A program made the translations under genes and the position numbers. DNA of 64,000 nucleotides, taken from positions 62,001-126,000 of the IMG/VR virus record IMGVR_UViG_3300021057_000274; one strand, given 5' to 3'. The stretch's first letter is position 1, and each line of letters opens with the position of its first letter. Of the stretch, positions 2,714 to 25,854 are shown one piece after another. The notes under the pieces are model-generated. The model saw nothing but the letters and a program-made list of their open reading frames with translations. It was not told the origin of the DNA and did not search any database.

Positions 2714-3339
2714 GATACGGGCGCGAGTACCTCGTCGGGTTTCTCCTGAGATGCGTCGTCTGGGTGTTGATGCACGTCGTCTATCGTCTTACCAAGGTTG
2801 GAGTTGAGAACATCCCGAAGCGTGGCCCGGGGGTCATCGTTTGCAACCACGTCTCGTTTCTCGATGCTCTCGTGATCACGGCCGCTTGTCCGCGTCCGAT
2901 CCGCTGGGTGATGGACCATCGCATCTACCGCACCCCAGTGATGAGCTGGCTCTTCAAGCTGTTGCGTGCGATCCCGATCGCGCCTGAGCGCGAGGACCGA
3001 GAGACCCTAGAGAGAGCTTACGACCGCATCGCTAGAGCCTTGGACAAGGGAGAGCTAGTCGGGATCTTCCCAGAGGGGCGCTTGACCAACACCGGTGACA
3101 TCCTCGAGTTTCGTGGCGGGGTGATGAGAATTCTCGAGCGCTACCCGGTCTACGTCGTGCCGATGGCGCTCTCGGGTCTGTGGCGCAGCCTGTTCGCGCG
3201 CAATCCCGAGAAGTACCGGTGGTGGACGCGAATCTGGCCGCGCGTGCGCGTAGTTGTCGGCGAGCCTGTCCCGCCTCTCGGAGTGACGCCTCAGATGTTA
3301 CACACGATCGTCGCTGGATTGAGAGGGGCTTGGAGATGA
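2710..3339 (+). CDS. plsC: 1-acyl-sn-glycerol-3-phosphate acyltransferase
   Basis: NHVSFLD (HxxxxD) and FPEG motifs. Confidence 0.9.
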   Translation: MRYGREYLVGFLLRCVVWVLMHVVYRLTKVGVENIPKRGPGVIVCNHVSFLDALVITAACPRPIRWVMDHRIYRTPVMSWLFKLLRAIPIAPEREDRETLERAYDRIARALDKGELVGIFPEGRLTNTGDILEFRGGVMRILERYPVYVVPMALSGLWRSLFARNPEKYRWWTRIWPRVRVVVGEPVPPLGVTPQMLHTIVAGLRGAWR

Positions 3340-3434
3340 GTGGTGAGAACGCTCTCCGTAGCGCGTTAGGAATTCCGAACTAGCTCTTCAAAAAGTAGTT
3401 TACCTTTGAAAAGAGCTGTGATATATTCTTCCTC

Positions 3435-3527
3435 GCGGTGGCTATTGGTCGGGTTACTCCCACACATGCCAGCGGCGACGCCCCTCGGGGCTAGCCGCTA
3501 CCAATCACTTGGTCAGATCTCCATCGC
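3435..3527 (+). ncRNA. Y-RNA-like structured RNA, copy 1
   Basis: Ends pair (gcggtgg/ccatcgc); inner stem ttggtcgggt/acttggtcag; 22/23-nt identity with copy 2. Confidence 0.55.
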
Positions 3528-3530
3528 TTT

Positions 3531-3572
3531 AGCGTCGCCCGGTGATCGAGGGTTCGACTCCCTCGCGGCGCT
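3531..3572 (+). ncRNA. tRNA-like minihelix (acceptor stem plus T arm)
   Basis: agcgtcgc/gcggcgct 8 bp; GAGGG-TTCGACT-CCCTC. Confidence 0.6.
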
Positions 3573-3574
3573 CC

Positions 3575-3640
3575 TGCAACGGCTATAGGTCGGGTTACTC
3601 CCATCCTTCATGCGAACACTTGGCCTAATCTTCCGTTGCA
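3575..3640 (+). ncRNA. Y-RNA-like structured RNA, copy 2
   Basis: tgcaacgg/ccgttgca outer stem; taggtcgggt/acttggccta inner stem. Confidence 0.55.
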
Positions 3641-3662
3641 AACAATTCTCCACGGAGGCACC

Positions 3663-5876
3663 GTGACACAGCTCTCGAAGAACATCGTCGCCCTGTCCAA
3701 GGGCCTGGTCGTGATCCCGCGGGGATCTGGCCTCAAGATGCAGTTGCGCGAGGACGTATACGCGGCCTCCCTCCAAGCGTCGCTGATGCAGCTCGGCTAC
3801 ATGCTGAGCCGCGAGGCGTACGCCCTCGCCCTCTCGGCGCCGGCCGAGTGGGTCAAGGAGTTCTACGACGAGGCGATCCCGTACCTCAAGGAGGCGGTCG
3901 GGGCGAAGCGCGACTACCGTGCGATGTATCGCAACTTCCCCCAGCAGGTCATGGACCTGTCACACGTCGATCTGTTCATCAACGCGATCACTCACTATTG
4001 GTCAAACGGCCAGTGGGAGCCGCCGCACGAGCTAGCTGAGCGCGGCGTCAAGTTCGAGAGCACCGAGTTCAAGCTGCTGAAGCCGATCGACGAGGCCGGT
4101 TTTCTCAACCTCTTCACCCAGATGGTGGCGATCGGCCAAGCGCTCACTCCTCAAGACCGCAAGATCGTCGAGTGGTTCATCGACTCGGGGCTGAAGCTCA
4201 CCCTGCCAGAGACGATCCCGTTCAAGGAGACCCTGTGCCTGCTCGCTGCGAAGGGTCTCAACGTTCCGGTGAAGACTCCGACCGACGTGCTCCGCATCGC
4301 GGTTCACCTGTCTGGCGGTGACATCTCGCTGCCGGGCATCCCGTCGGCGAAGGTGAAGGCGCCGACCGGTGGCCGCTACTCCTCCGCTCGCTATTGGGAG
4401 ACCTACTATCGAGAGAGCGCCGAGAGAGCCGCGGCCGCCGCGCGCGAAGCGTTCAAGTTCAGGAAGTTCAAGCGACCGCAGCGACGCCTGCTGCTCGAGA
4501 TGCTTGACCGCGTCGCCGACGTCGCCGAGATGCAACGCTACCTCGGCCGCTGGCTCCGTCTGGGTGAGATCCTCCACCCGGGCGAGTTTGCCGGAAAGTT
4601 CCCACGCGCCCACGCGGCGTTCAAGACCCTTCGTAACCAGGAGGGACCAGACACTCGAGTCCGCACGTTCGACGCGCAGGTCAACCTCGCTTTCGCCGCG
4701 AGCGCGAGGGCTGGTTTGAAGGTTTTGACGACCCGGCCGGGCGAGTTCGCTCGCCGCCTGGATTGGCTGCTCCGCACCCATGACGCCGAAGCGGTCATGG
4801 ACGTTTTCACCGAGATCGCGCCGCGAATCAGCTCGAAGGTGCTGTTCGAGCTGTGGACTCACCTGGTCAATCGTGAGACTCCGGGCGCGGCGCGGACGGT
4901 CATGCTCAAGGGTCGCGGCGCGAAGTTTAAGACCCTTCCGACCCTCCCGGCGCTCCCGACCGACGTCGTGCAGCTCGCGACGCGGACGATCGCTAAGGCC
5001 CTCAAGGGCAAGATCAAGGACGCGAAGCTGCCGAGCCTGGGTAACGTTTGGATCGACCCGCAGCTGGCGACCCTGCCGCTGCCAGCGTCGATGCGTGACA
5101 TGAACACCGGTCTCAAGACGTACGTTCGCGGCACCCGTCTGCCGTTCCGCGGGGACGCGAAGGTGGTTCGCGCGTTCGTGCACTGGTACGACGAGGACGG
5201 GACTCAAGACATCGACCTGAGCTTCTCGTTCCACGGCCACAGCCTGGAGGCGATGGGGCACGTCAGCTTCACGAACCTGCGCGAGGGGGCGTGGGCGGTG
5301 CACTCGGGCGACATCCGTCACCGGGTCGGCTCGTGCGCGGAGTACATCGATGTCAACATCGAGAAGGCTCGCCAGCGCGGCGTCCGCTACGTGATGGTGC
5401 ACTGCTACAACTTCAACGGTCGTCCGATGCACACGGTGCCAGAGTGCCGCTTCGGGATGATGGAGCGCGAGCACCAGCGCTCGAACGAGATCTTCGAGGC
5501 GCGCACCGTGACCAACGCGATGCCCCTGATCAACCAGGGCACCACGGTCCTGGCGTGCATTCTCGATCTCCAGGAGCGCTGCATGATCTGGGCGGACATG
5601 GAGGCGGATCGCTACCTGGCGGTCGTTGAGAACACCGCGAGCAAGGCCGCGGAGGCGATCCGCAAGCTGGTGGGTCGTCCTGCGATCTCGGTCGCCGACC
5701 TGCTGCGCATGCACGCCGAGGTGCGCGGCGAGGTGGTGCAAGACGAGGCTCGCGCAGACACGAAGTTCAAGGCCGAGGACCTGACGACGGATTACGTCAC
5801 GATCGCGGGGCTGATGTCCCTCGACGCGCCGGCCAAGAAGGCGCCGGCGTCTAAGCGAGTGAAGATCGCCGCGTAA
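3663..5876 (+). CDS. large protein with C-terminal TerD-like domain (resembles SCO0854/MXAN_6230-type proteins)
   Basis: GGAGG RBS plus GTG; RPGEFARRLDWLLR; C-terminal DIDLS..HSGDI..AEYIDV TerD-like motifs. Confidence 0.7.
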   Translation: MTQLSKNIVALSKGLVVIPRGSGLKMQLREDVYAASLQASLMQLGYMLSREAYALALSAPAEWVKEFYDEAIPYLKEAVGAKRDYRAMYRNFPQQVMDLSHVDLFINAITHYWSNGQWEPPHELAERGVKFESTEFKLLKPIDEAGFLNLFTQMVAIGQALTPQDRKIVEWFIDSGLKLTLPETIPFKETLCLLAAKGLNVPVKTPTDVLRIAVHLSGGDISLPGIPSAKVKAPTGGRYSSARYWETYYRESAERAAAAAREAFKFRKFKRPQRRLLLEMLDRVADVAEMQRYLGRWLRLGEILHPGEFAGKFPRAHAAFKTLRNQEGPDTRVRTFDAQVNLAFAASARAGLKVLTTRPGEFARRLDWLLRTHDAEAVMDVFTEIAPRISSKVLFELWTHLVNRETPGAARTVMLKGRGAKFKTLPTLPALPTDVVQLATRTIAKALKGKIKDAKLPSLGNVWIDPQLATLPLPASMRDMNTGLKTYVRGTRLPFRGDAKVVRAFVHWYDEDGTQDIDLSFSFHGHSLEAMGHVSFTNLREGAWAVHSGDIRHRVGSCAEYIDVNIEKARQRGVRYVMVHCYNFNGRPMHTVPECRFGMMEREHQRSNEIFEARTVTNAMPLINQGTTVLACILDLQERCMIWADMEADRYLAVVENTASKAAEAIRKLVGRPAISVADLLRMHAEVRGEVVQDEARADTKFKAEDLTTDYVTIAGLMSLDAPAKKAPASKRVKIAA

Positions 5877-5880
5877 GTAG

Positions 5881-5910
5881 TTTACTTTTCGCGCGATCTG
5901 TGATTAAATA
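5881..5910 (+). promoter_or_regulatory. sigma70-like early promoter (representative of recurring motif)
   Basis: TTTACT-N~17-TG.TAAAT; similar at 14, 2412, 3399, 9503, 12724, 17270, 29319, 38798. Confidence 0.6.
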
Positions 5911-5996: not shown

Positions 5997-6335
5997 ATGA
6001 AGTCCTAGGTTTCCGAACAAAAGCACTGGACGTACTGCTTCCTCCGCGGTGATCTCCCGATCGCCCAGCAGGCGCTCCAAGCCGGACATGCTCTCCTCGA
6101 GCTCGGCATCAAGCACGGCCCGTCGCCCGACGGTCATCCCAGCATCATCTTCCTGGACACAAAGGACAAGCAAGAGCTCGAAGCTGCTCTCGACTTGACG
6201 CGCTCTCACGGGCTCAAGACGTACGAGTTCCACGAGCCGTACAAGAACTGGGGCCTCACGTCGTTCGCGACGCAACCGATTCCGGAAGATCAGCGTCACC
6301 TCTTCAAGCAGTTCAACCTCTGGAGGAAGTCATGA
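5997..6335 (+). CDS. Pth2-like peptidyl-tRNA hydrolase with in-frame TAG at codon 4
   Basis: GGAG RBS, ATG AAG TCC TAG then 108 sense codons; RGDL..QQALQAGHA and EP...LTSFATQP motifs; missed by ORF track. Confidence 0.7.
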
Positions 6336-9565: not shown

Positions 9566-9643
9566 AGCGGAGTGGAGCAGCCCGGTAGCTCGTTGGCCTC
9601 ATAAGCCAAAGGTCGTTGGTTCGAATCCAACCTCACGCAACCA
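9566..9643 (+). tRNA. tRNA-Met(CAU), initiator-like 1:72 mismatch
   Basis: Cloverleaf, loop CTCATAA, CCA; bulge in acceptor stem. Confidence 0.8.
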
Positions 9644-9762
9644 GCTCAGCACCTTCCCCGAGGTGCAAAGCTAACTAGCGGTGGATCGCTAGCACAATCT
9701 GAAAAATCAGTCGTTTCTCCACCTAAGCACAAACGACCGTCGGACGCTGTAACCGACATTTT

Positions 9763-9836
9763 GCGGGTGTGGTACAATGGTAGCATGCAACCTTGCCAAG
9801 GTTGAGACGAGGGTTCGATTCCCTTCACCCGCTCCA
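9763..9836 (+). tRNA. tRNA-Gly(GCC)
   Basis: Cloverleaf, loop TTGCCAA, U73, CCA. Confidence 0.95.
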
Positions 9837-9899
9837 GTAGGTAGTTGTAAAAGGTCGACCGCCCACATGGGGCGGCGGATTTGAAGGTACCTACGCAGT

Positions 9900-9970
9900 G
9901 CGGGTGTAGCTCAATGGTAGAGCAACTGCCTTCCAAGCAGAAGACGGGGGTCCGATTCCCCTCACCCGCT
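9900..9970 (+). tRNA. tRNA-Gly(UCC), no genomic CCA
   Basis: Cloverleaf, loop CTTCCAA. Confidence 0.9.
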
Positions 9971-9972
9971 CC

Positions 9973-10046
9973 GAGGTTGTCGTCTAAGTGAAGACGCTGG
10001 GGCCCCAAAATCTCCAGAAACGGTGGTTCAAACCCATCCGACCTCG
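9973..10046 (+). ncRNA. tRNA-like RNA with 11-nt anticodon loop
   Basis: gaggttg/cgacctc acceptor, D and T arms; loop GCCCCAAAATC. Confidence 0.6.
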
Positions 10047-10171
10047 CCGATGCTGGAGTTCAAACGCGAAGCCGGTTTCCGGAGCTAGCTCAACCTGAAC
10101 TCGCAGCAGAAGCATCACAGGGTTGGGGGTTTCGCGGACCTCTGTGTTTCAAGAGCTTTGCTGATGCGTCT

Positions 10172-10247
10172 GGGGAAGTAGCTCAGCTGGGAGAGCGCAA
10201 CGTTCGCAACGTTGAGGTCGAGGGTTCGATCCCCTTCTTCTCCACCA
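10172..10247 (+). tRNA. tRNA-Ala(CGC)
   Basis: Cloverleaf, G3-U70, CCA. Confidence 0.95.
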
Positions 10248-10302
10248 CGTTAGTCCCGTAACTAGTACTCGGGACAGTGATCGGTGAGACTCCGATCAAG
10301 TT

Positions 10303-10378
10303 GGGGCCTTAGCTCAGCTGGGAGAGCGTATGCATGGCATGCATAAGGTCAAGGGTTCGATCCCCTTAGGCTCCACCA
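10303..10378 (+). tRNA. tRNA-Ala(GGC)
   Basis: Cloverleaf, G3-U70, loop ATGGCAT. Confidence 0.95.
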
Positions 10379-10506
10379 ATCGCGCACTGAGCGGAGACGC
10401 TTGGGGCGAAAGAGGGTTCAAAGCTGGTGCTGAGAAGTCGGGGTAAGAGCTAACGCCCAACCCGAGAACCTCAGGATGATGCTCGCTTTGATTGCGTTAG
10501 CACCAA

Positions 10507-10581
10507 GCGGAATTAGTTCAGTGGCTAGAACGAGAGCTTCCCAAGCTCAAGACGCGGGTCCGATTCCCGCATTCCGCTCCA
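10507..10581 (+). tRNA. tRNA-Gly(CCC)
   Basis: Cloverleaf, loop TTCCCAA, CCA. Confidence 0.95.
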
Positions 10582-18748: not shown

Positions 18749-18824
18749 GCGCCTGTAGCTCAGTGGAGAGAGTGCCGCGCTACGAACGCGGAGGTCGGGG
18801 GTTCGATCCCCTCCAGGCGTGCCA
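18749..18824 (+). tRNA. tRNA-Arg(ACG)
   Basis: Cloverleaf, CCA. Confidence 0.95.
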
Positions 18825-19028
18825 GAGGTTAAGTCGATGACCTCGATGTAACACCTAGAAGTCGACAACGCCGGTGAATCAGGGCGTGGGGAACCAAGTA
18901 CTGGTTGGATGCTGAAATGAAGCCGCGGTTTTACCCTTAAGCGCGGTGGATGACTGAGAAAGGGCGCTGTAGCCGGTCTAGCATGGGTGTCGAAGTCGAC
19001 TCCCCCTCGATCGGAGCGGTGACAAGAT

Positions 19029-19100
19029 ACGCCCGCCGATGGATTTTCGGCGCCAGGTCTTCTAAACCAGGATAGGAGGGTTCGATTCCTTCCGGGCGTG
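19029..19100 (+). tRNA. tRNA-Arg(UCU), no genomic CCA
   Basis: Loop CTTCTAA; A-A mismatch in anticodon stem. Confidence 0.75.
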
Positions 19101-19103
19101 CCT

Positions 19104-19177
19104 TCCCACATAGCTCAATGGTAGAGCCGCTGGTTGTGAACCAGATTGCCCGGGTCCGATTCCCGGTGTGGGACCCA
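19104..19177 (+). tRNA. tRNA-His(GUG)
   Basis: Loop TTGTGAA, C73, CCA. Confidence 0.9.
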
Positions 19178-19193
19178 GTAGTTGCAGTTCAAT

Positions 19194-19286
19194 TCCTCGG
19201 TACTCTAACGGTAAGAGACCTGGCTGTTAACCAGACGTATCCCGCCACCGAGCGGTATGGAGGTTCGAGTCCTCCCTGAGGAGCCA
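19194..19286 (+). tRNA. tRNA-Asn(GUU) with long variable region
   Basis: Loop CTGTTAA, G73, ~23-nt variable region. Confidence 0.85.
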
Positions 19287-19289
19287 AAT

Positions 19290-19364
19290 GGGTGCGTAGC
19301 TCAGTGGTAGAGCGGGAACCTGTTAAGTTCCGGGTCGAAGGTTTGATTCCTTCCGTGCCCTCCA
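19290..19364 (+). tRNA. tRNA-Asn(GUU)
   Basis: Loop CTGTTAA, CCA. Confidence 0.85.
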
Positions 19365-19375
19365 CAATTCAGTAA

Positions 19376-19441
19376 CCGGGAAGTCCTAGTGACGTATTGC
19401 CGCGGCTGCCATCGTTGGCACGTAGGCTAGGACTTCCCGGT
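19376..19441. repeat. 15-bp perfect inverted repeat hairpin
   Basis: accgggaagtcctag/ctaggacttcccggt. Confidence 0.8.
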
Positions 19442-19455
19442 AGAAGTACAACATT

Positions 19456-19530
19456 GGCTCATTGATGAATGGGTTATCATACTACCCTGTCACGGTAGGT
19501 TAGCGGGTTCGAGTCCCGCATGGGTCGCCA
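19456..19530 (+). tRNA. tRNA-Asp(GUC)
   Basis: Loop CTGTCAC, G73, CCA. Confidence 0.95.
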
Positions 19531-19534
19531 AAAT

Positions 19535-19615
19535 GCGCTTCGGGAGGTTGAATCTCAACAGGTCGGGTCGCTCCCGTCTGTAAAACATGGGTTAAATTCC
19601 TGTGGAAGCGCGCCA
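19535..19615 (+). ncRNA. tRNA-like RNA with non-canonical core
   Basis: gcgcttc/gaagcgc-G-CCA, degenerate T arm, no normal anticodon arm. Confidence 0.55.
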
Positions 19616-19660
19616 AAATTAGAGGCTGACGATTCTGGGCGGCAATCTAGAGTCGGCGGT

Positions 19661-19767
19661 TTGTCGTTGAGGGTGGCTCCTCAGGACCCCGAGTAGGACG
19701 GTGAGATCTTGCCGGATCGAGCCGTTTGAAACGGGTCCTGTCGGTGGTTCGATTCCACCACGACTTC
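19661..19767 (+). ncRNA. tRNA-like RNA with expanded anticodon arm
   Basis: gtcgt/acgac, D-like hairpin, ggaccc/gggtcc enclosing ~45 nt, canonical T arm. Confidence 0.5.
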
Positions 19768-19954
19768 ACTCTAACCCTCTTCATGAAGCTGTGGGTAGAT
19801 CACCCTGCCACAAATCGGGTGATGAGGTCCGATCGCCTTCGTCCGTGGCATGCATGGCGCCAGGGCGATACCCCAGCAGTAACTGCGGCCGTCACCGAAC
19901 TTTATGCGAGAAAGTTCAGCGGTGACGAGGAGGAGGCGAACTGCTCGTTCAGTT

Positions 19955-20029
19955 GTCCCATTCGTCTAGTGGCTAGGACACAACCCTTTCAAGGTTGAGA
20001 ACGGGGATCGAAACCCCGATGGGACACCA
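19955..20029 (+). tRNA. tRNA-Glu(UUC)
   Basis: Loop CTTTCAA, CCA. Confidence 0.95.
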
Positions 20030-20033
20030 CTAT

Positions 20034-20109
20034 CTGGGTGTAGGTCAGCGGCGAGACTGCCTGGTCCGGAGCCAGGAGGCCGTGGGTTCGAGTCCCACCA
20101 CCCAGACCA
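20034..20109 (+). tRNA. tRNA-Pro(CGG), C33
   Basis: C1-G72, A73; loop TCCGGAG. Confidence 0.9.
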
Positions 20110-20149
20110 AAGCGGCCCCCAGCGCCGCTCTAAGCCGAGGCTGGGGCAT

Positions 20150-20225
20150 CGGAGAGTCGCCTAGCGGCTATGGCGCCTGCTTTGGGAGCAGGATACCGTG
20201 GGTTCGAGTCCCACCTTTCCGACCA
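20150..20225 (+). tRNA. tRNA-Pro(UGG)
   Basis: Loop TTTGGGA, CCA. Confidence 0.95.
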
Positions 20226-20235
20226 ACACATCAAT

Positions 20236-20310
20236 CGCTTCTTGGCGGCAAGCTGCCGTGCTCCCACTAGAAGGGAGAGCGAGGAGGTTCACGCCCTCCA
20301 GGAGCGACCA
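20236..20310 (+). tRNA. atypical tRNA, UAG anticodon (Leu-like) without long arm
   Basis: Full cloverleaf plus CCA; loop ACTAGAA; D loop lacks GG; T loop TTCACGC. Confidence 0.55.
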
Positions 20311-20311
20311 C

Positions 20312-20385
20312 GGGTCCGTAGTTCAATGGTAGAATGTTACCTCGACACGGTAGAGACGAAGGTTCGATTCCTTCTGGACCCACCA
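20312..20385 (+). tRNA. tRNA-Val(GAC), C33
   Basis: Loop TCGACAC, CCA. Confidence 0.9.
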
Positions 20386-20391
20386 AAATTT

Positions 20392-20465
20392 GGGCTACAA
20401 GCTTTAAGGTGAAGCATCTGGCTCTTACCCAGAAGAACGGGGATCATTACCCCGGTAGCCCACCA
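20392..20465 (+). tRNA. tRNA-Lys(CUU)
   Basis: Loop CTCTTAC, CCA. Confidence 0.9.
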
Positions 20466-20468
20466 GCA

Positions 20469-20617
20469 TTCGGTAGTGACCTAACGTTCAGGACGAAAGG
20501 AATCGTGCGGTCGCCCTAGTACCAGCTCTGGGTGACTAAACGGAGTCGAGTAGGCCTGCTCGCAAAAGGGATCGGTCAGGGACTGGTACTCCAGAGGTTC
20601 GACTCCTCCTACCGGAC
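20469..20617 (+). ncRNA. 149-nt tRNA-like RNA with expanded D and anticodon arms
   Basis: ttcggtag/ctaccgga, agtaccag/ctggtact, GG-TTCGACT-CC T arm. Confidence 0.55.
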
Positions 20618-20625
20618 TAAACTAG

Positions 20626-20702
20626 GGTTCTTTAGCTCAGATGCGTAGAGCGCCGAGCTTACACCTCGGATGTCGGGGGTTCAAGTCCCTCAGGAACCAC
20701 CA
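20626..20702 (+). tRNA. tRNA-Val(UAC)
   Basis: Loop CTTACAC, CCA. Confidence 0.95.
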
Positions 20703-20704
20703 AT

Positions 20705-20780
20705 GGCGATGTGGTGAACTGGCTATCACGCGGCTCTCATAAGGCTGAGTAGACGGGATCGAAACCCTCCATCGCTACCA
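20705..20780 (+). tRNA. tRNA-Met or Ile2 (CAU)
   Basis: Loop CTCATAA, CCA; identity not resolvable by eye. Confidence 0.9.
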
Positions 20781-20881
20781 TTCTAGGAAGTTGGGACTGC
20801 TCAAGCGGACGGAGTCCGGTAGCCCTCGCGGGGAGACCAATGAGTTGTGGTTCGATTCAACGCCTAGCTTTTATTGCGCTT

Positions 20882-20956
20882 CCCTCATTCGTCTAATGGT
20901 CAGGGCCCGTGCTTGATAGGCGCGTGACGGTGGTTCGATTCCATCATGAGGGACCA
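20882..20956 (+). tRNA. tRNA-Ile(GAU)
   Basis: Loop TTGATAG, CCA. Confidence 0.9.
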
Positions 20957-21046
20957 ACAGCAGCCGAGAAGCAGGCCCGTCGGTCGGTTAGAGAGCCTTC
21001 CGCACGTGCGCTCCGTGAAGCCACGGCAAACGGACTGCTGCATTAT

Positions 21047-21121
21047 CAGGGTGTAGCTCAGTGGGAGAGTGCTACGTCGGGAACGTAGAGGCCGCAGGTT
21101 CAATCCCTGCCACCCTGACCA
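21047..21121 (+). tRNA. tRNA-Pro(GGG), C33
   Basis: C1-G72, A73; loop TCGGGAA. Confidence 0.9.
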
Positions 21122-21224
21122 ATAGCTGGCTTGCAAGTGACGAGAGGTCATCATGCTTCGGAGCGCACGCTGGGGATAAGCTCCCAGCGCAGCGACCTAG
21201 ACGGCAAGCTGGCGGGCCTTATTT

Positions 21225-21295
21225 CAGAGCGTAGCGTAGTGGTAGCGTACCTGGCCTGGAACCAGGAGGTGTTGGTTCGATTCCAGCCGCTCTGA
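21225..21295 (+). tRNA. tRNA-Pro(UGG), C33, no genomic CCA
   Basis: C1-G72, A73; loop CCTGGAA. Confidence 0.85.
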
Positions 21296-21297
21296 CC

Positions 21298-21385
21298 GGG
21301 GGAAGATGTAGGTTCGAATCCTATCCAATGGCCATAAGCCCGTGAGGGTGGCTGGCAGGTAGCTCAACCGGCAGAGCAGCTCCCC
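21298..21385 (+). ncRNA. circularly permuted tRNA-like RNA (T arm before D arm; YrlA-like topology)
   Basis: GTAGG-TTCGAAT-CCTAT precedes TAGCTC-AACCGGCA-GAGC; ends gggga/tcccc pair. Confidence 0.6.
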
Positions 21386-21391
21386 TTTCTG

Positions 21392-21467
21392 GTACATTAG
21401 CTCATGGGGTTAGAGCGCGCGCCCGATAAGCGCGGGGTGGAAGGTTCGAGTCCTTCATGTACCACCA
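21392..21467 (+). tRNA. tRNA-Ile(GAU), C33
   Basis: Loop CCGATAA, CCA. Confidence 0.9.
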
Positions 21468-21600
21468 GACAACACCGTTGCTTCTCACCGAGAGAAGCCA
21501 GCTAGCAAGCGAAGCAGACATTCGTCTAGATCACTGCGACTGGACCCGGAATCCCTCGCGTGGTGGCCGATTGTCGGCTAGGACGGATTCGTTGTCTACT

Positions 21601-21673
21601 GGGGGATGTAGCCGGGGCACAGGAACGCCTTGCAAGCGATCCGCGATGGGTTCAACTCCCATATCCTCCACCA
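21601..21673 (+). tRNA. tRNA-Ala(UGC), atypical D and anticodon stems
   Basis: G3-U70, loop CTTGCAA, CCA. Confidence 0.75.
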
Positions 21674-21774
21674 GATCTTTAGCTCAAACGGGTAAGAGCG
21701 GCGGGACAGATAACCCGCGTCAAGGTGAGCTACGGCGAGCCGAGTGCGGCGACCCCATGCCGTAAGATCTACCA
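21673..21774 (+). ncRNA. tRNA-like RNA with 8-nt anticodon loop and replaced T arm
   Basis: agatctt/aagatct-A-CCA, canonical D arm, gcggg-ACAGATAA-cccgc, tacggc/gccgta arm. Confidence 0.6.
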
Positions 21775-21778
21775 AACT

Positions 21779-21849
21779 GGGCTGTTAGTTTAGCGGGAAA
21801 ACACTGCGCTTGCACCGCGGAATCCGGGGTTCGACTCCCCGACGGTCCA
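21779..21849 (+). tRNA. tRNA-Ala(UGC), no genomic CCA
   Basis: G3-U70, loop CTTGCAC. Confidence 0.9.
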
Positions 21850-21863
21850 CCCACAGATAGGAG

Positions 21864-22052
21864 ATGATCATGTTACCGATCGACGAAGCTGTCAAGCTCA
21901 CCGACATGGATGAGCTGGGTCGTGAGGAGTGGGAGCGTCTCTTCATCTCGACGAACCCGATGTGGAACGTCAGCCCGACCGAGGTCATGAGCGAGGTCAG
22001 AAGGTTGGGTGAACGTCGTAAGGAGCTCCTCAAGGGAGTTCGCTGGTTCTAA
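21864..22052 (+). CDS. small hypothetical protein inside tRNA array
   Basis: AGGAG RBS, 62 aa. Confidence 0.65.
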   Translation: MIMLPIDEAVKLTDMDELGREEWERLFISTNPMWNVSPTEVMSEVRRLGERRKELLKGVRWF

Positions 22053-22057
22053 GCTGT

Positions 22058-22131
22058 TGGGGATTGGTGAAATGGTATCATGTGAGATTCTGACTCTCAA
22101 GTCGTAGGTTCGATTCCTACATCCCCTGCCA
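22058..22131 (+). tRNA. tRNA-Gln(CUG)
   Basis: Loop TTCTGAC, G73, CCA. Confidence 0.95.
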
Positions 22132-22180
22132 CACAACGTCCCTCCACGCCTCTCAACGATGCGCACCCAGGAGGGCCTCT

Positions 22181-22253
22181 GTGCCTCAGACCAATCTGGT
22201 GATGGACCGAGCCTGAAAGCCTCGGAAGCTCGGTTCGATTCCGAGGGGGCACA
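22181..22253 (+). tRNA. tRNA-Phe(GAA), no genomic CCA
   Basis: Loop CTGAAAG; C31-C39 mismatch. Confidence 0.8.
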
Positions 22254-22255
22254 CC

Positions 22256-22348
22256 GGTAGGTGGCGCTGGCGCGCGGCTGGGCCTTATAGACCCGGGAGA
22301 CTGGCCGGACTGGCTGGAACGGCGAGGGTTCGAATCCCCGACCTACCA
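22256..22348 (+). tRNA. tRNA with UAU anticodon (Ile-type) and long variable arm
   Basis: ggtaggt/acctacc-A; loop CTTATAG; ~25-nt variable region. Confidence 0.65.
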
Positions 22349-22453
22349 CCTGTAAGAATCTCCCGAGGTTTGACCCGAGGAGTCGTTAGAGAAGATGATA
22401 TCTCGCTGGCGACGGCCAGAGAACCCCGGGGATGACAGACTCCCGGGACGATT

Positions 22454-22529
22454 GGCCCTTAAGCTAATCAGGTGAAAGCGCCGGTCTGAAAAGCCGGAGA
22501 GTCTGGTTCGATACCAGAAGGGGCCACCA
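22454..22529 (+). tRNA. tRNA-Phe(GAA)
   Basis: Loop CTGAAAA, CCA. Confidence 0.95.
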
Positions 22530-22547
22530 ATACAGGAGGATCGCCAA

Positions 22548-22634
22548 ATGTTCAAAGCTTGGTGGGACAATGGGGCAACGAGAGGCTTTGGGATGCGCTT
22601 ATTCCGGAGCTGGCTTTGTGGTGATTGCTGCTAG
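22548..22634 (+). CDS. 28-aa Trp/Cys-rich peptide
   Basis: AGGAGG RBS; MFKAWWDNGATRGFGMRLFRSWLCGDCC. Confidence 0.45.
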   Translation: MFKAWWDNGATRGFGMRLFRSWLCGDCC

Positions 22635-22653
22635 AGCGATTCCGGACAGACAG

Positions 22654-22731
22654 ATGACATGGAGCTGGTACTTCTTTCTCGGATTTCGCGTACGTGGAAA
22701 GCACTTAATTGATTTTCGCTGGACGAAGTAG
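22654..22731 (+). CDS. 25-aa aromatic-rich peptide
   Basis: MTWSWYFFLGFRVRGKHLIDFRWTK; weak RBS. Confidence 0.35.
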   Translation: MTWSWYFFLGFRVRGKHLIDFRWTK

Positions 22732-22737
22732 ATCTGT

Positions 22738-22810
22738 TGGGGTGAGGATTGGCATCTACGGATGGCTTTGAACCATCTCGGACACGGTTCGATTCCGTGC
22801 GCCCCTGCCA
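22738..22810 (+). tRNA. tRNA-Gln(UUG)
   Basis: Loop CTTTGAA, G73, CCA. Confidence 0.85.
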
Positions 22811-22966
22811 AGGTTGATGGAATGATCATCGACGCCTAGAAGAGCGTGCACGCTTCCTCCAGAGCGGCTAGACGTGAGGAGGATTTTGGATGAAGGGCTA
22901 TCCTCGTTCGATTCGAGGCGTCCTGAACGAAACGGCGCCGAGTCGGTGGAAGCCCGGCGCCTGCAT

Positions 22967-23038
22967 GTCCCGTTGGATTTCCGGGTAGATCGCTGGGACT
23001 TCACCCCAGAGAGACGGGTTCAACTCCCGTACGGGACG
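22967..23038 (+). tRNA. tRNA-Glu(UUC), C33, no genomic CCA
   Basis: Loop ACTTCAC, G73. Confidence 0.85.
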
Positions 23039-23045
23039 CCCCCAC

Positions 23046-23134
23046 GGGGCGCGACGCTGAAGACACCGCCGCGGGCTCAACGCTAGGCCACCGCGGTAAG
23101 ACTTCGGGGCGGACGGTTTCCGCGCGCTCCACCA
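23046..23134 (+). ncRNA. Ala-acceptor tRNA-like RNA resembling a tmRNA TLD with no mRNA domain
   Basis: ggggcgc/gcgctcc with G3-U70, A73, CCA; stemless D region; accgc/gcggt arm. Confidence 0.55.
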
Positions 23135-23151
23135 AATGATACAATAGCTAG

Positions 23152-23907
23152 ATGCTCTACGTAGGAACCAGCGGCTTCCAGTACAAGCACTGGAACGACG
23201 GCGTGTTCTACCCGTCTGGCGTCAAGGATCGCTTGGCGTTTCTCAGCCAACGGATGAACGCTCTCGAGATCAACGCGTCGTTCTACAGCATTCCAAAACC
23301 GGGGAGCGTGCGGCGCTGGAGCGAGAAGCTTCCGCAGAACTTCAAGCTAACGCTCAAGGCTCCTCGGTCGGTCACGCACCGACGTCGCCTCAAGCTGCGG
23401 AGCGACCCGACGATCAAGCAAGGCTGGGACCTCCTCCGCTACTTCTCGGAGGGCGTTCTTCAGATCGCTCCGCAGCAGCGAGGACCTGTTCTCGTGCAGT
23501 TGGAGCACAGATTTAAGATCGATCTCGACCGCTTAGAGGCCGTGCTGGAGTTCTTCAGAGTTCTCCAGCTGACCGTTGCGCTCGAGGTAAGGTGTACCTC
23601 CTGGCTTCGGATGGAGACGCTCAGGCTGCTTCGAGAGTATCGAGGCGCGTTGGTCTCCGCGGATTGGAGGGAGTGCACGGTGCCGATCTACGACACGGGA
23701 AGCTTCGTGTACGTGCGCCGCCACGGGTCGCTCGGACGATACTTCGGGTCATACTCGAGGGCCAAGCTCCAGGCTGATCTCGACGCGGTAGCGCCGTACC
23801 TAGAGCAAGGGCGCGACGTCTACGTCTTCTTCAACAATGACGGCGGCGGCGCGGCCCCGAGGAACGCAGTAAGCATGCTTAAGTTAGCAGATGTCCGATT
23901 CGTCTAG
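23152..23907 (+). CDS. DUF72 (YecE-like) family protein
   Basis: YVGTSGFQY.HW..FYP, EINASFY, KAP..TH, FFNN. Confidence 0.9.
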   Translation: MLYVGTSGFQYKHWNDGVFYPSGVKDRLAFLSQRMNALEINASFYSIPKPGSVRRWSEKLPQNFKLTLKAPRSVTHRRRLKLRSDPTIKQGWDLLRYFSEGVLQIAPQQRGPVLVQLEHRFKIDLDRLEAVLEFFRVLQLTVALEVRCTSWLRMETLRLLREYRGALVSADWRECTVPIYDTGSFVYVRRHGSLGRYFGSYSRAKLQADLDAVAPYLEQGRDVYVFFNNDGGGAAPRNAVSMLKLADVRFV

Positions 23908-23967
23908 TGGTAAGGACGCTAGCCCCTCAAGCTGGAAACCCGGGTTCGATTCCCGGCTCGGACGCCA
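23893..23967 (+). tRNA. tRNA-Glu(CUC), C33
   Basis: Loop CCCTCAA, CCA; overlaps DUF72 stop. Confidence 0.9.
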
Positions 23968-23968
23968 C

Positions 23969-24042
23969 GCGGATTTGGTCTAATGGTATGACGTGAGATC
24001 GCCAGTCTCAAAGCGCGGGTTCGATTCCCGCAATCCGCTCCA
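23969..24042 (+). tRNA. tRNA-Gly(GCC), C33
   Basis: Loop TCGCCAG, U73, CCA. Confidence 0.9.
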
Positions 24043-24117
24043 ACGTTGGTCGCGCGCTTGACCGTTCCGCGAGATAAGAGAGGAGGTCTCTAAAATGAGA
24101 TCCGCCAACGTTTCAAT

Positions 24118-24192
24118 GGTACCCATGGTGTAATGGAAGCACTTCTCCCTGTGAAGGAGGTAGCACCGGATCGATACCGGTTGGGTACCCCA
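24118..24192 (+). tRNA. tRNA-His(GUG) with G-1
   Basis: G-1:C73, loop CTGTGAA, CCA. Confidence 0.95.
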
Positions 24193-24195
24193 TAA

Positions 24196-24270
24196 CTCGC
24201 TGTGGTGAAACGGACATCACGATCCTCTCCTAAAGGGTAAGTCCAGGTTCAATTCCTGGCAGCGAGGCCA
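24196..24270 (+). tRNA. tRNA-Arg(CCU)
   Basis: Loop CTCCTAA, CCA. Confidence 0.95.
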
Positions 24271-24271
24271 T

Positions 24272-24346
24272 CTCCGGTCCAGTGGCATTCTGGCACAGCG
24301 GCTACGAACCGCAGTTGCGGGAGTTCGATTCTCTCACCGGGGTCCA
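24272..24346 (+). tRNA. tRNA-Arg(ACG)
   Basis: Loop CTACGAA, CCA. Confidence 0.8.
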
Positions 24347-24353
24347 AACACAT

Positions 24354-24427
24354 GTCGGTGTGGTCCAATGGCAGGGCGATTGGCTGCAACCCAATAGACG
24401 GGGGTTCGATTCCCTTCACCGACTCCA
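24354..24427 (+). tRNA. tRNA-Cys(GCA)
   Basis: Loop CTGCAAC, U73, CCA. Confidence 0.95.
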
Positions 24428-24630
24428 AAGAAAAAGCGGCGCCCGATGAGTTGGGCGCCGCTGGAGGACCGGCCCTTCGCAGGGAGGGGAGGAGGGGCCG
24501 GTTGGACGAATTTCAATGTATCACTCTCTCCCGAGAAAGTAAACAGATTCTTGCAAGAAGAAAGCACTTCGACCTCAGCCTGGCCGGGCGGTCGAAAAGT
24601 TGGGGTAAGAGCCCTCATGGCTAGGCGCAG

Positions 24631-24704
24631 GCCCGGTTCGTACAGTGGTAGTACGCCTGTTTCGTAAACAGGATGCGGGGGTCCGATTCCCTCACTGGGC
24701 ACCA
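24631..24704 (+). tRNA. tRNA-Thr(CGU)
   Basis: Loop TTCGTAA, CCA. Confidence 0.95.
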
Positions 24705-24705
24705 T

Positions 24706-24780
24706 CTCGCTGTAGTGAAGTGGACATCACGGTCTCCTCCGAAGGGACAAGCCCAGGTTCGATTCCTGGCAGCGGGGCCA
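24706..24780 (+). tRNA. tRNA-Arg(CCG)
   Basis: Loop CTCCGAA, CCA; body nearly identical to Arg(CCU). Confidence 0.95.
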
Positions 24781-24798
24781 AGCTACATAAATAGCCTC

Positions 24799-25125
24799 AT
24801 GAAGCTCTCAGACCTCTTCGAGACCAAGTCCAACTTTTACGTGAAGCTGTGGGGGAAGGTGAACGACGTCCAGATCGACGGCGTCTCCGACCTCGAGGAC
24901 CTCCACGAGAAGATCGGCACAGGCGCTTCGAATCCGATCAAGAAGAAGATTGAGGCGGCGTTCGCCGAGCTGGTCAACGCTAAAGGCGACCACTACGCCG
25001 CCGAGATTCAAGAGGTGATCTGGGAGCACAATGACGAGTTCTTCGGCGTTGACCTCTACGTCAGCACTCCAGACCTTGACGGTGAAGCTCCCCGCACGGT
25101 GCGCGGCGAAGTTCACCAGTCGTGA
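24799..25125 (+). CDS. hypothetical, putative virion internal protein
   Basis: TAAATA 24788; MKLSDLFE. Confidence 0.75.
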   Translation: MKLSDLFETKSNFYVKLWGKVNDVQIDGVSDLEDLHEKIGTGASNPIKKKIEAAFAELVNAKGDHYAAEIQEVIWEHNDEFFGVDLYVSTPDLDGEAPRTVRGEVHQS

Positions 25126-25454
25126 GACTCAACGAGATCTTCTCCTACGAGGACGACGAGGAGCGTCGCATTCAAGCTCGTCGCAAGCGCGACACGTACG
25201 GTGCTCCACTACATCCCAGCAAGGCCAACACCTTCGTCGCCAAGTTGCTCGACAAGCATGACGGCAACCCGAAGGCGGCACTCGCTGAGCTCGTCGACGA
25301 GATCGACGACTACCAGCGGAGCCGCGGCAAGAACGGCCCGATGATGACGCTCTACACCGCGATGCACCAGATGCTCTTGGACTACGTCAAGAACCCAAGC
25401 GCCTTTCAGCGGTTCATGCAAAAGGTTGTCAAGACTCCGCCCGATAAACTTTGA
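25122..25454 (+). CDS. hypothetical, putative virion internal protein
   Basis: GTGA coupling; MRLNEIF. Confidence 0.7.
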   Translation: MRLNEIFSYEDDEERRIQARRKRDTYGAPLHPSKANTFVAKLLDKHDGNPKAALAELVDEIDDYQRSRGKNGPMMTLYTAMHQMLLDYVKNPSAFQRFMQKVVKTPPDKL

Positions 25455-25513
25455 CGGTGAAGCCTTCTCTTGTAAAGAAGCGGAAGTCGGTTCGAATCCG
25501 GCATCGGGCACCA
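25439..25513 (+). tRNA. tRNA-Thr(UGU)
   Basis: Loop CTTGTAA, CCA; overlaps upstream CDS end. Confidence 0.9.
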
Positions 25514-25524
25514 AACTCAACAAC

Positions 25525-25598
25525 GCTCTTGTAGTCCATTGGTAAGATGCATCCTTGGTAAGGATGAGAACAGGGTTCGATTCCCTGCTGGAGCACCA
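25525..25598 (+). tRNA. tRNA-Thr(GGU)
   Basis: Loop TTGGTAA, CCA. Confidence 0.9.
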
Positions 25599-25614
25599 CG
25601 TAGAAAGTCATCAA

Positions 25615-25854
25615 ATGAATCTCAAGGACATGGTCTCAGGCAACAAGCTCGTGCGGTTCTCCTTTTACCGTGAGGGCCAGCTCTGGTACAAGACGGAGTG
25701 CGGCTTCGAGTTTCCCGTGCCCACCGATCCCAACGAGATCGGCACCGCCGTCTTCCTCGCGGAGGACAAGGCGCTGCTCTTCATGCGGTACATCAGGAAG
25801 CACCTCGACTATCTCAACAAGGCCAAGCAAGAACAAGCTGGAGATGCCGGTTAA
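25615..25854 (+). CDS. hypothetical protein
   Basis: 79-aa ORF with phage-like codon use. Confidence 0.7.
   Translation: MNLKDMVSGNKLVRFSFYREGQLWYKTECGFEFPVPTDPNEIGTAVFLAEDKALLFMRYIRKHLDYLNKAKQEQAGDAG

What the first reader, a model, noticed from the sequence alone, without database searches (positions are those of the whole stretch)
3421..5876. Tandem Y-RNA-like ncRNAs directly upstream of a large TerD-domain protein: possible Ro60-analogous RNP
Seen: two end-paired RNAs (3435-3527, 3575-3640) share GGCTAT(T/A)GGTCGGGTTACTCCCA and CACTTGGYC..ATCT. Both form the same inner stem with compensatory differences and have different outer stems. They lie between a promoter and the gene's RBS. Known: Ro60/Rsr genes are flanked by paired Y RNAs with a conserved protein-binding stem and tRNA-like modules. 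The protein's TDVLRIAV loosely recalls TROVE DLLRL. Inference: an undescribed protein-ncRNA system for RNA repair or stress, or autoregulatory binding sites.
Basis: partly seen in the sequence, partly recalled or inferred. Interest (0 to 1): 0.85.

Follow-up and report, generated by a model that had tools for sequence, protein, structure and literature searches.

The report
New small RNAs paired with TerD-like protein
The two small folded RNAs in front of this phage gene belong to a large RNA family, absent from Rfam 15, that sits beside one uncharacterised 700-residue protein in hundreds of phages and bacteria, which points to a new RNA-protein particle that resembles Ro60/Y RNA in layout but not in ancestry.

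Summary
Window 3435-3527 and 3575-3640 are two copies of a structured RNA: outer stem P1, GGCUAU, 9-bp stem P2, UUACUYCYA, a variable tip, then NUUUCC.

A covariance model built only from distant AT-rich phage relatives hits exactly these two sites in the 64-kb window. It gave 196 hits in 66 phage loci and 128 hits in 80 bacterial loci. All 324 are on the strand of a homologue of the 737-aa gene at 3663-5876.

Both stems covary strongly: 94-97% of cells are paired, against 32-59% for slid controls. A scan with an RNA-only pattern recovers the protein gene in 60 of 78 stretches, always on the same strand.

The protein has a helical N-terminal part and a TerD-like beta-sandwich. Pfam, hhalign and Foldseek find no relation to Ro60/TROVE. 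Rfam 15 has no family for the RNA.

Some relatives carry YrlA-like tRNA modules in the tip. The window has a tRNA-like minihelix between its two copies.

Best reading: these RNAs are the protein's specific ligands, forming a Ro60/Y-RNA-like particle built from unrelated parts, and the gene-proximal copy may also act as an operator. Binding and function are inferred, not shown.

The parts
3399..3427 (+). Sigma-70-like promoter, TTTACC-17 nt-TG-TATATT. The predicted start lies just before P1 of RNA copy 1.
   Evidence: The element GTAGTTTACNTTT recurs at 5877, after the gene.
3435..3527 (+). RNA copy 1. P1 3435-3441/3521-3527, GGCUAU 3440-3445, P2 3445-3453/3508-3516, UUACUCCCA 3454-3462, extension hairpin about 3471-3499, 3' loop AUCU 3517-3520.
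   Evidence: Model R1 hit at 3438-3524, 19.9 bits, E 0.0069. Sequence, fold.
3532..3574 (+). tRNA-like minihelix. 7-bp acceptor-like stem 3532-3538/3565-3571, 9-nt linker, T-arm 3548-3552/3560-3564 with loop UUCGACU, then U and CC. Likely a processing signal separating the two RNAs (inferred).
   Evidence: Read from the sequence. Weak Rfam matches to mascRNA and tRNA-Sec cover this stretch. Fold -20.8 kcal/mol, z -1.95.
3575..3640 (+). RNA copy 2. P1 3575-3582/3633-3640, GGCUAU 3581-3586, P2 3586-3594/3619-3627, UUACUCCCA 3595-3603, 3' loop AUCUU 3628-3632.
   Evidence: Model R1 hit at 3579-3636, 22.7 bits, E 0.0012. The minimum-free-energy fold equals the family structure, z -4.59.
3654..3665 (+). 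Shine-Dalgarno GGAGG (3654-3658) and GTG start codon (3663).
   Evidence: Sequence. The 737-aa product equals the called protein P0001.
3663..5876 (+). Gene for the 737-aa protein. The part up to about residue 480 is mainly helical. Invariant residues include NFP 91-93, D208-V-L-R211 and many Arg/Lys. No internal stop codon.
   Evidence: Alignment A1, AlphaFold model with pLDDT 81.6, NCBIfam NF041916 E 4.6e-86 but below its cut-off, phrog_33734.
5136..5606 (+). TerD-like beta-sandwich domain (about residues 492-648), keeping the DxD, SGD and E..D motifs.
   Evidence: Foldseek hits to TerD structures 2qz7, 2kxt, 2qng and 3ibz. Strands in the model. Invariant columns.

Best explanation
The two RNAs are members of a widespread family of small (about 55-135 nt) structured RNAs. 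I propose they are the specific RNA ligands of the adjacent helical-plus-TerD-like protein.

Shown:
- The family exists and both of its stems covary.
- Its invariant unpaired nucleotides (GGCUAU, UUMCUUCUA, NUUUCC) flank stem P2.
- It is almost always found within about 1-2 kb of the protein gene, on the same strand, either upstream or downstream, in 1 to 6 copies.
- The link holds from AT-rich phages to GC-rich phages and to cultured Bacillales and Planctomycetes.

Inferred:
- The protein recognises the invariant module, and the variable tip is presented as cargo. The tip can be a plain hairpin, a hairpin with an anticodon-like loop, or a full YrlA-like tRNA mimic.
- The particle would therefore work like Ro60 with Y RNA: a protein platform plus an adaptor RNA that engages tRNA-handling or RNA-turnover factors, or that decoys them.
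- In this window the RNAs are made from the promoter at 3399-3427 as the 5' part of the gene's transcript, and are released by cleavage at the tRNA-like minihelix at 3532-3574 (RNase P/Z type).
- In Paenibacillus, the ribosome-binding site lies inside P1 of the proximal copy, so that copy probably also serves as an autoregulatory operator.
For: - Model R1 was built from 29 phage sequences without the window. It hits only 3579-3636 and 3438-3524 in the window.
- It gives 196 hits at E<=0.01 in 66 viral loci, all on the gene's strand, with 65 of 66 loci positive. Of the best 150, 73 lie upstream and 76 downstream.
- Covariation in the viral set: 94.5% of cells paired against 32-50% for slid partners; 752 cells with changes on both sides against 231 in shuffles; 0 of 500 shuffles reach the score.
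- An independent bacterial set, not used for the model: 128 hits in 74 of 80 loci, all on the gene's strand, with 96.7% paired against 35-59% slid.
- Alignment-free test: the spacer finds a perfect 8/8 partner in its own downstream sequence in 51% of 239 units, against 7% when paired with another unit's downstream sequence.
- Reverse test: an RNA-only pattern scanned over viral contigs gave 78 stretches. 60 of them hold the protein gene, all 60 on the same strand and usually 20-400 nt away. Most of the others are cut short.
- Copies that cannot be leaders exist. Downstream copies are common in phages. Brevibacillus has a third copy with its own promoter-like site and U-tract, separated from the gene by two opposite-strand genes.
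- tRNA-like tips: L048 2756-2859 and L051 5133-5198 score 42.3 bits on Rfam YrlA. The true YrlA at the Bxz1 Ro60 locus scores 32.5 bits.
- Bacterial neighbours are unrelated housekeeping genes, so RNA plus gene is a self-contained unit.
- The family has 14 invariant Arg/Lys.
Against: - No binding, expression or processing data exist. The protein-RNA contact is inferred from linkage only.
- The protein has no recognised RNA-binding domain, and TerD domains are known for Ca2+ binding, not RNA binding.
- In bacteria the copies are almost always directly upstream, often ending in a U-tract or overlapping the ribosome-binding site. That fits a purely cis-acting leader.
- Only a minority of members carry tRNA-like tips. 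The two window copies do not.
- Conserved neighbours that would name a pathway (RtcB, CCA-adding enzyme, phosphoesterase, SmpB) appear only in some phage lineages.
- The window hits have modest E-values on their own.
Confidence: 0.55

Rival explanations
1. The RNAs are purely cis-acting leaders. They would be a protein-binding operator or a riboswitch-like or attenuator element controlling the downstream gene, with no stable trans-acting particle.
For: - In bacteria, one or two copies lie directly upstream on the same strand.
- In Paenibacillus, the GGAG ribosome-binding site lies in the 3' strand of P1, 7-12 nt before the start codon.
- Many copies end in P1 plus a U-tract, like an intrinsic terminator.
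- In the window both copies lie between the promoter and the ribosome-binding site.
Against: - About half of the phage copies lie downstream of the gene, and up to 6 copies occur per locus.
- Brevibacillus has an orphan copy behind two opposite-strand genes, with its own promoter-like site.
- Some copies carry whole tRNA-like modules, or are embedded in tRNA-like genes.
- The variable tip leaves no conserved ligand pocket typical of a riboswitch.
Confidence: 0.2
2. The RNAs are independent small RNAs or tRNA-derived decoys that do not bind the neighbouring protein. They would be co-located only because both belong to a tRNA or translation island, or are co-regulated.
For: - In phages the module sits in tRNA arrays next to the CCA-adding enzyme, RtcB, SmpB/tmRNA and GOLLD RNA.
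- Ten tips have 7-nt anticodon-like loops, against 0.4 expected.
Against: - In bacterial chromosomes there is no tRNA island, and the neighbours are unrelated, yet the RNA-gene pairing and strand are kept.
- The RNA-only scan recovers the protein gene in 60 of 78 stretches.
- Such strict pairing over this range of divergence is hard to explain without a direct functional link.
Confidence: 0.12
3. The system is a highly divergent true Ro60/Y RNA system, with a TROVE ring in which the vWA domain has been replaced by TerD.
For: - The gene order matches known phage and bacterial Ro60 loci, with two small RNAs upstream on the same strand (PMC12135203, PMC4201824).
- The N-terminal part is helical.
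- Some partner RNAs have YrlA-like tRNA modules.
Against: - No Pfam TROVE or vWA_Ro60 hit in 32 members, while the Bxz1 gp220 control scores 1e-50.
- hhalign probability is 0.1%.
- No Ro60 chain is among the 50 best Foldseek PDB matches (E up to 0.7), nor any Ro60 among the 50 best BFVD matches.
- The conserved RNA module is different, and model R1 finds nothing at the Bxz1 locus.
Confidence: 0.05
4. The elements are a repeat or small mobile element, or a chance similarity with no RNA-level function.
For: The copies are tandem and vary in number between loci.
Against: - Compensatory changes occur at 11 of 13 pairs, while loop nucleotides stay invariant.
- All 324 hits share the gene's strand.
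- Only two copies occur in the 64-kb window.
Confidence: 0.02

Closest known systems
Ro60 (Rsr, TROVE + vWA) with Y RNAs, especially bacterial and phage YrlA/YrlB (Rfam RF02553; PMC4201824; Thermus phage phiLo, PMC12135203)
   Same: - One large protein gene has one to several small end-paired RNAs beside it on the same strand.
- A conserved stem module lies near the RNA ends and the tip is variable.
- In some members the tip is a tRNA mimic (T-arm, closed acceptor-like stem, D-arm).
- The system occurs in both bacteria and large phages.
   Different: - The protein is not detectably related to Ro60 and carries a TerD-like beta-sandwich instead of a vWA domain.
- The conserved RNA module is GGCUAU / UUMCUUCUA / UUUCC around a 9-bp stem, not GGUCCGA or GNCGAA.
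- Most members are short hairpins without a tRNA module.
- No binding has been shown.
TerD family (Pfam PF02342; structures 2qz7, 2kxt, 2qng)
   Same: The C-terminal domain has the same beta-sandwich fold and keeps DxD and SGD...E..D motifs at the positions of the Ca2+ sites.
   Different: - No Pfam TerD hit.
- The domain is fused to a 480-residue helical domain.
- It is not in a ter operon.
- It is linked to RNA genes.
NCBIfam NF041916, the MXAN_6230/SCO0854 family RING domain-containing protein
   Same: Clear sequence homology over residues 147-693 (E 4.6e-86). Cultured-phage and bacterial homologues also match. The ESM Atlas structural match to the N-terminal part has TM 0.72.
   Different: - The score is far below the equivalog cut-off (290 against 600 bits).
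- No RING domain was found in the five longest relatives scanned against Pfam.
- That family is itself uncharacterised, and I found no paper on it.
- Whether RING-bearing relatives have the RNA was not tested.
Autoregulatory protein-binding mRNA leaders (ribosomal-protein leaders, the ThrRS operator)
   Same: The proximal copy lies in the 5' leader. In Paenibacillus it overlaps the ribosome-binding site.
   Different: Copies also occur downstream, as orphans, in multiples and fused to tRNA-like modules.
tRNA-like processing elements (the mascRNA type; tRNA-punctuated transcripts)
   Same: The window minihelix at 3532-3574 has a 7-bp acceptor stem, a T-arm with a UUCGACU loop and a 3' UCC. In relatives the RNAs are interleaved with tRNA genes.
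   Different: It lacks D and anticodon arms, and cleavage has not been shown.

Membership tests
Ro60 / TROVE protein family | TROVE (HEAT-repeat ring) domain, Pfam PF05731 | tested here: not met
   - No hit at E<=10 in any of 32 members.
- The control Bxz1 gp220 scores 9.4e-50.
- hhalign of A1 against the Ro60 profile A6 gives probability 0.1%.
- No Ro60 chain is among the 50 best Foldseek PDB matches, which run to E 0.7.
Ro60 / TROVE protein family | C-terminal vWA domain with a MIDAS site (Pfam PF25045) | tested here: not met
   The C-terminal domain is a TerD-like beta-sandwich. There is no vWA hit.
Ro60 / TROVE protein family | Closed ring with a central cavity that binds RNA ends | not testable with these tools
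   Only a summary of the model is returned. Coordinates could not be inspected.
Y RNA / YrlA (Rfam RF00019, RF02553) | Ro-binding helix motif near the 5' end (GGUCCGA, or GNCGAA in bacteria) | tested here: not met
   - The family consensus is GGCUAU...UUMCUUCUA...UUUCC.
- No Y RNA or YrlA match at E<=10 in window 3300-3720.
- Model R1 finds nothing at the Bxz1 Ro60 locus.
Y RNA / YrlA (Rfam RF00019, RF02553) | tRNA-like module (T-arm, closed acceptor-like stem, D-arm) in the tip | tested here: inconclusive
   - Present in some relatives: L048, L051, L040 and L045, at 42.3 bits against a gathering score of 69.
- Absent from both window copies.
- The window instead has a separate minihelix at 3532-3574.
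Y RNA / YrlA (Rfam RF00019, RF02553) | Encoded next to the partner protein gene, on the same strand | tested here: met
   This meets the layout only; the partner is a different protein.
TerD family | TerD beta-sandwich fold | tested here: met
   Foldseek hits to 2qz7, 2kxt, 2qng and 3ibz, E 5e-4 to 2e-3, target TM 0.64-0.70.
TerD family | Pfam PF02342 sequence signature | tested here: not met
   No hit at E<=10 in 32 members.
NCBIfam NF041916 (RING_SCO0854) | Score above the equivalog cut-off, and a RING domain | tested here: not met
   290 bits against a cut-off of 600. No RING hit in five long relatives. The protein is a homologue but not a member.
Known Rfam families (release 15) | Any match to the new RNA module | tested here: not met
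   None in the window, in 6 viral loci or in 8 bacterial loci.

The most novel reading that the evidence does not exclude
This is a second class of Y-RNA-like ribonucleoprotein, independent of Ro60 and widespread in bacteria (Paenibacillus, Brevibacillus, Priestia, Planctomycetes, Acidobacteria) and in large phages. A helical-plus-TerD protein would hold a conserved RNA module and present interchangeable tips: tRNA mimics, anticodon-loop mimics or plain hairpins. Those tips would recruit or decoy tRNA-processing, repair or anticodon-nuclease factors. The tRNA-mimic adaptor design would then have arisen, or been grafted, on two unrelated protein platforms.
Probability: 0.4. Interest if true: 0.9.

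Novelty: new variant of a known kind. Interest (0 to 1): 0.82.

Why it matters
Ro60 with Y RNA is so far the only described bacterial and phage system in which a dedicated protein carries adaptor RNAs with tRNA-like modules.

This is a family of comparable reach:
- About 2,700 protein clusters match at E<=1e-10 among 1.84 billion representatives.
- More than 300 RNA copies were seen here.
- It has the same layout as Ro60/Y RNA but unrelated parts.
- The RNA is absent from Rfam 15 and the protein from Pfam. I found no paper on either.

It gives a testable function to an orphan protein family and to unannotated intergenic space in tRNA islands of large phages. It also occurs in tractable hosts and cultured phages (Priestia megaterium, Brevibacillus, Paenibacillus; phages XacN1, Weasels2 and LpeD), so the hypothesis can be tested directly.

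If the particle is real, it bears on how phages and bacteria manage or protect tRNA pools, and on the unknown biochemical role of TerD-like domains.

Tried and rejected
- DNA similarity to deposited phages: none.
- PDB sequence search with the protein and with its profile: nothing.
- PADLOC defence models: none.
- Ro60/TROVE homology: rejected.
- Literal search for the window motif in relatives: failed. A degenerate pattern was needed.
- The first MAFFT alignments put the 3' strands out of register. A seed limited to ungapped P2 was used instead. That selection inflates pairing in the seed, so the conclusions rest on the model-wide sets, the independent bacterial set and the alignment-free test.
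- Conserved neighbours: only lineage-specific ones were found, namely calcineurin-like phosphoesterase, SmpB and an RNaseH-like protein. None is conserved in bacteria.
- Idea that UUCCUUCUA mimics the 16S 3' tail (anti-Shine-Dalgarno): CCUUC can pair with GGAGG, and Paenibacillus has GGAGGCAUC between its copies. However, the motif is equally conserved in copies that lie downstream of the gene, where it could not occlude the gene's ribosome-binding site, so I left this as speculation.
- Anticodon-like 7-nt loops: enriched (10 against 0.4 expected) but found in only about 5% of tips.
- Ruegeria phage RpAliso has the protein but no hit to the model at E<=1.
- The 455-nt gap after the gene: no Rfam hit and no unusual folding.
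- RING-bearing relatives could not be reached.
Full report
**What is in the window**

A promoter-like site, TTTACC-17-TG-TATATT, lies at 3399-3427.

Both RNAs have the same plan: an outer stem P1, then GGCUAU, a 9-bp inner stem P2, UUACUCCCA, a variable tip, the 3' strand of P2, a 4-5 nt U-rich loop, and CC closing P1. The outer stems are unrelated in sequence. P2 differs by one flipped pair and two one-sided changes. Copy 2's minimum-free-energy fold is exactly this structure (z -4.6). Copy 1 keeps P1, but an alternative pairing competes with P2.

The window comes from a roughly 390-kb phage contig with 41 tRNA genes.

**The RNAs belong to a large family**

The protein has more than 1,700 relatives in the word-indexed search. 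In the exhaustive search, 2,731 clusters at 50% identity match at E<=1e-10.

I fetched 80 viral loci encoding relatives that are 29-46% identical to the window protein. The window motif is not present literally. Reading the flanks showed the same architecture in very AT-rich sequence, and a degenerate pattern found 1-6 same-strand copies beside the gene in almost every locus.

I built covariance model R1 from 29 such phage sequences, with none from the window. Its results:
- In the 64-kb window it hits only 3579-3636 (E 0.0012) and 3438-3524 (E 0.0069).
- Over 66 viral loci it gives 196 hits at E<=0.01, all on the gene's strand, with 65 loci positive.
- Of the best 150 hits, 73 are upstream and 76 downstream. 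The nearest copy lies 11-567 nt upstream or 11-1,975 nt downstream of the gene, in most loci within about 350 nt, and one further hit overlaps the gene start.

**Structure support**

On the 150-sequence model alignment, 94.5% of cells pair, against 32-50% when partners are slid. Eleven of 13 pairs change on both sides, most with four to six pair types, and no shuffle out of 500 reaches the observed score.

That alignment is fitted to the structure, so I added two checks:
- An independent set from bacterial genomes, never used for the model, gives 96.7% paired against 35-59% slid.
- An alignment-free test on 239 units, defined only by the 5' motif, finds a perfect 8/8 partner for the spacer in its own downstream sequence in 51% of units, against 7% in another unit's.

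The invariant nucleotides are unpaired: GGCUA(U), UU(A/C)CUUCU(A), an A two to four nt before the 3' strand of P2, and UUUCC.

**Linkage in both directions, and in bacteria**

A scan of one genome per species found 241 loci, of which 80 were kept. They come from Paenibacillus, Brevibacillus, Priestia megaterium, Cohnella, Singulisphaera, Paludisphaera and various metagenome-assembled genomes. Model R1 gives 128 hits in 74 of these loci, all on the gene's strand, usually as one or two copies directly upstream.

The neighbouring genes there are unrelated housekeeping genes, so RNA plus gene is a self-contained unit.

In the reverse direction, an RNA-only pattern scanned across 2.9 million viral contigs returned 78 stretches. 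Sixty of them contain the protein gene, always on the same strand. Most of the rest are stretches cut short on one side.

Cultured phages XacN1, Weasels2 and LpeD also carry copies next to their homologue. The Priestia megaterium protein is 33% identical over its full length.

**The protein**

The AlphaFold model has mean pLDDT 81.6. It shows a mainly helical part up to about residue 480, a beta-sandwich at about residues 492-648, and C-terminal helices. Foldseek matches the sandwich to TerD structures. Full-length structural relatives are uncharacterised phage proteins.

Pfam finds nothing in 32 members, and PHROGs gives a family of unknown function. NCBIfam shows homology to the uncharacterised MXAN_6230/SCO0854 RING family, below its cut-off. 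PADLOC finds nothing.

I tested kinship with Ro60 directly. The control, Bxz1 gp220, scores 1e-50 on TROVE and on vWA_Ro60. A Ro60 profile compared with the family profile gives hhalign probability 0.1%. No Ro60 structure is among the 50 best Foldseek matches listed for either library. The protein is therefore not a Ro60 homologue by any test available here.

**Relation to Y RNAs**

Rfam 15 has no family for the conserved module, whether in the window, in viral loci or in bacterial loci.

Some family members do carry a full tRNA mimic in the tip, with a T-arm, a closed acceptor-like stem and a D-arm. L048 2756-2859 and L051 5133-5198 score 42.3 bits on YrlA. That is more than the genuine YrlA at the Bxz1 Ro60 locus, which scores 32.5 bits. 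Model R1 finds nothing at that locus.

A second topology also exists. These are tRNA-like genes with normal acceptor, D and T arms whose anticodon arm is replaced by a 63-nt insert carrying the motif, for example L014 5699-5821.

The tRNA-mimic cargo is therefore shared with YrlA, while the protein-proximal module and the protein are different.

**How it probably works**

Shown: a conserved structured RNA family, and strict co-location with one protein family on the same strand.

Inferred: the protein binds the invariant module, and the RNAs are stable partners. Several observations favour discrete RNAs:
- The predicted transcription start lies at P1 in the window.
- A conserved upstream element with a -10-like box appears before individual copies in freshwater phages (read by eye; not scanned).
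- P1 followed by a U-tract is seen at many 3' ends.
- Downstream and orphan copies cannot be leaders.

In the window there is no U-tract. The minihelix at 3532-3574 has a 7-bp acceptor stem, a UUCGACU T-loop and a 3' UCC, and is the likely RNase P/Z-type release signal. This is an inference.

In Paenibacillus, the ribosome-binding site lies within the 3' strand of P1, 7-12 nt before the start codon. The proximal copy probably doubles as an operator there.

The downstream function is open: tRNA or RNA quality control, repair, or decoying of anticodon nucleases. Context is suggestive only in phages, where the module sits among tRNA arrays, the CCA-adding enzyme, RtcB, a phosphoesterase and SmpB/tmRNA.

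**Rivals**

- A purely cis-acting leader fits the bacterial layout but not the phage copies (0.2).
- Independent small RNAs that do not bind the protein fit the tRNA islands but not the bacterial loci (0.12).
- A very divergent true Ro60 system (0.05).
- A repeat or chance similarity (0.02).

**Novelty and limits**

I found no description in Rfam 15, Pfam or the searchable literature. Subscription papers and recent motif catalogues not yet in Rfam could not be checked.

I rate this a new variant of a known kind. The layout and the tRNA-mimic cargo parallel Ro60/Y RNA, but both components are new families. If binding is confirmed, it would be a new class of ribonucleoprotein.

It fits the neighbouring frame at 5997-6335, which has an in-frame TAG.

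Noticed in passing
window 5997-6335 (+): An open frame that begins ATG AAG TCC TAG and continues for 108 codons, with a ribosome-binding site before the ATG and no other usable start. It is a candidate amber read-through gene, consistent with the tRNA(CUA) in the window. The gene caller left it empty. The piece after the stop has no Pfam hit.
   Followed up: partly
window 61181-61255 (+); also L014 2828-2902, L017 2813-2885, L051 6235-6311, L011 696-768: A suppressor-type tRNA with anticodon CUA occurs in the window and near the gene in several related phage loci. This suggests reassignment or suppression of TAG in this group of phages.
   Followed up: no
window 9570-10581 and 18749-28108: There are 41 tRNA genes in two arrays. 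tRNA-Asn at 19194-19286 is 93 nt long, so it may carry an insert or a long arm.
   Followed up: no
window 22140-22176 (+): A Rfam abiF RNA motif above its gathering score (48 against 37 bits), wedged between tRNA-Gln and tRNA-Phe inside the tRNA array.
   Followed up: no
window 3395-3407, 5877-5889 (+), 42879-42891 (-): A repeated element, GTAGTTTACNTTT, that includes the -35-like hexamer. There are 3 copies against 0.06 expected, so it is probably a phage promoter class.
   Followed up: partly
L004 2082-2488: A GOLLD RNA (156 bits) sits immediately upstream of the tRNA, the RNA copies and the gene in a related phage.
   Followed up: no
L014 5699-5821; L008 5758-5883: tRNA-like genes with canonical acceptor, D and T arms whose anticodon arm is replaced by an insert of about 63 nt carrying GGCUAU...UUACUUCUA. 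This is a second way of fusing the motif to a tRNA body.
   Followed up: partly
L082 / L089 (1,043,719-bp contig labelled as a Tepidisphaeraceae MAG): An array of 20 tRNA genes lies directly upstream of the RNA copy and the gene. EF-Tu, RNA polymerase beta and beta' subunits and topoisomerase I are nearby. It is unclear whether this is a bacterial chromosome or a very large phage.
   Followed up: no
L014 1227-1667 and 7874-8064: A phage-encoded SmpB, and a partial tmRNA match, occur in the same island as the RNA copies.
   Followed up: no
L112 1013-1070 (also L108, L109, L113, L114, L121, L122): Brevibacillus has a third, orphan copy with its own promoter-like site and a U-tract. It is separated from the gene by two opposite-strand genes (AhpC and one unknown).
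   Followed up: partly
L130 2880-2965 and other Paenibacillus loci: The GGAG ribosome-binding site lies in the 3' strand of P1 of the proximal copy, with the start codon 7-12 nt later. A conserved GGAGGCAUC lies between the two copies.
   Followed up: partly
tips of family members (for example L078 2724-2796, L011 5472-5536): Ten tip hairpins have 7-nt loops of the anticodon-loop form CU-NNN-A-N, such as CUGCAAA and CUUUUAC, against 0.4 expected from shuffles.
   Followed up: partly
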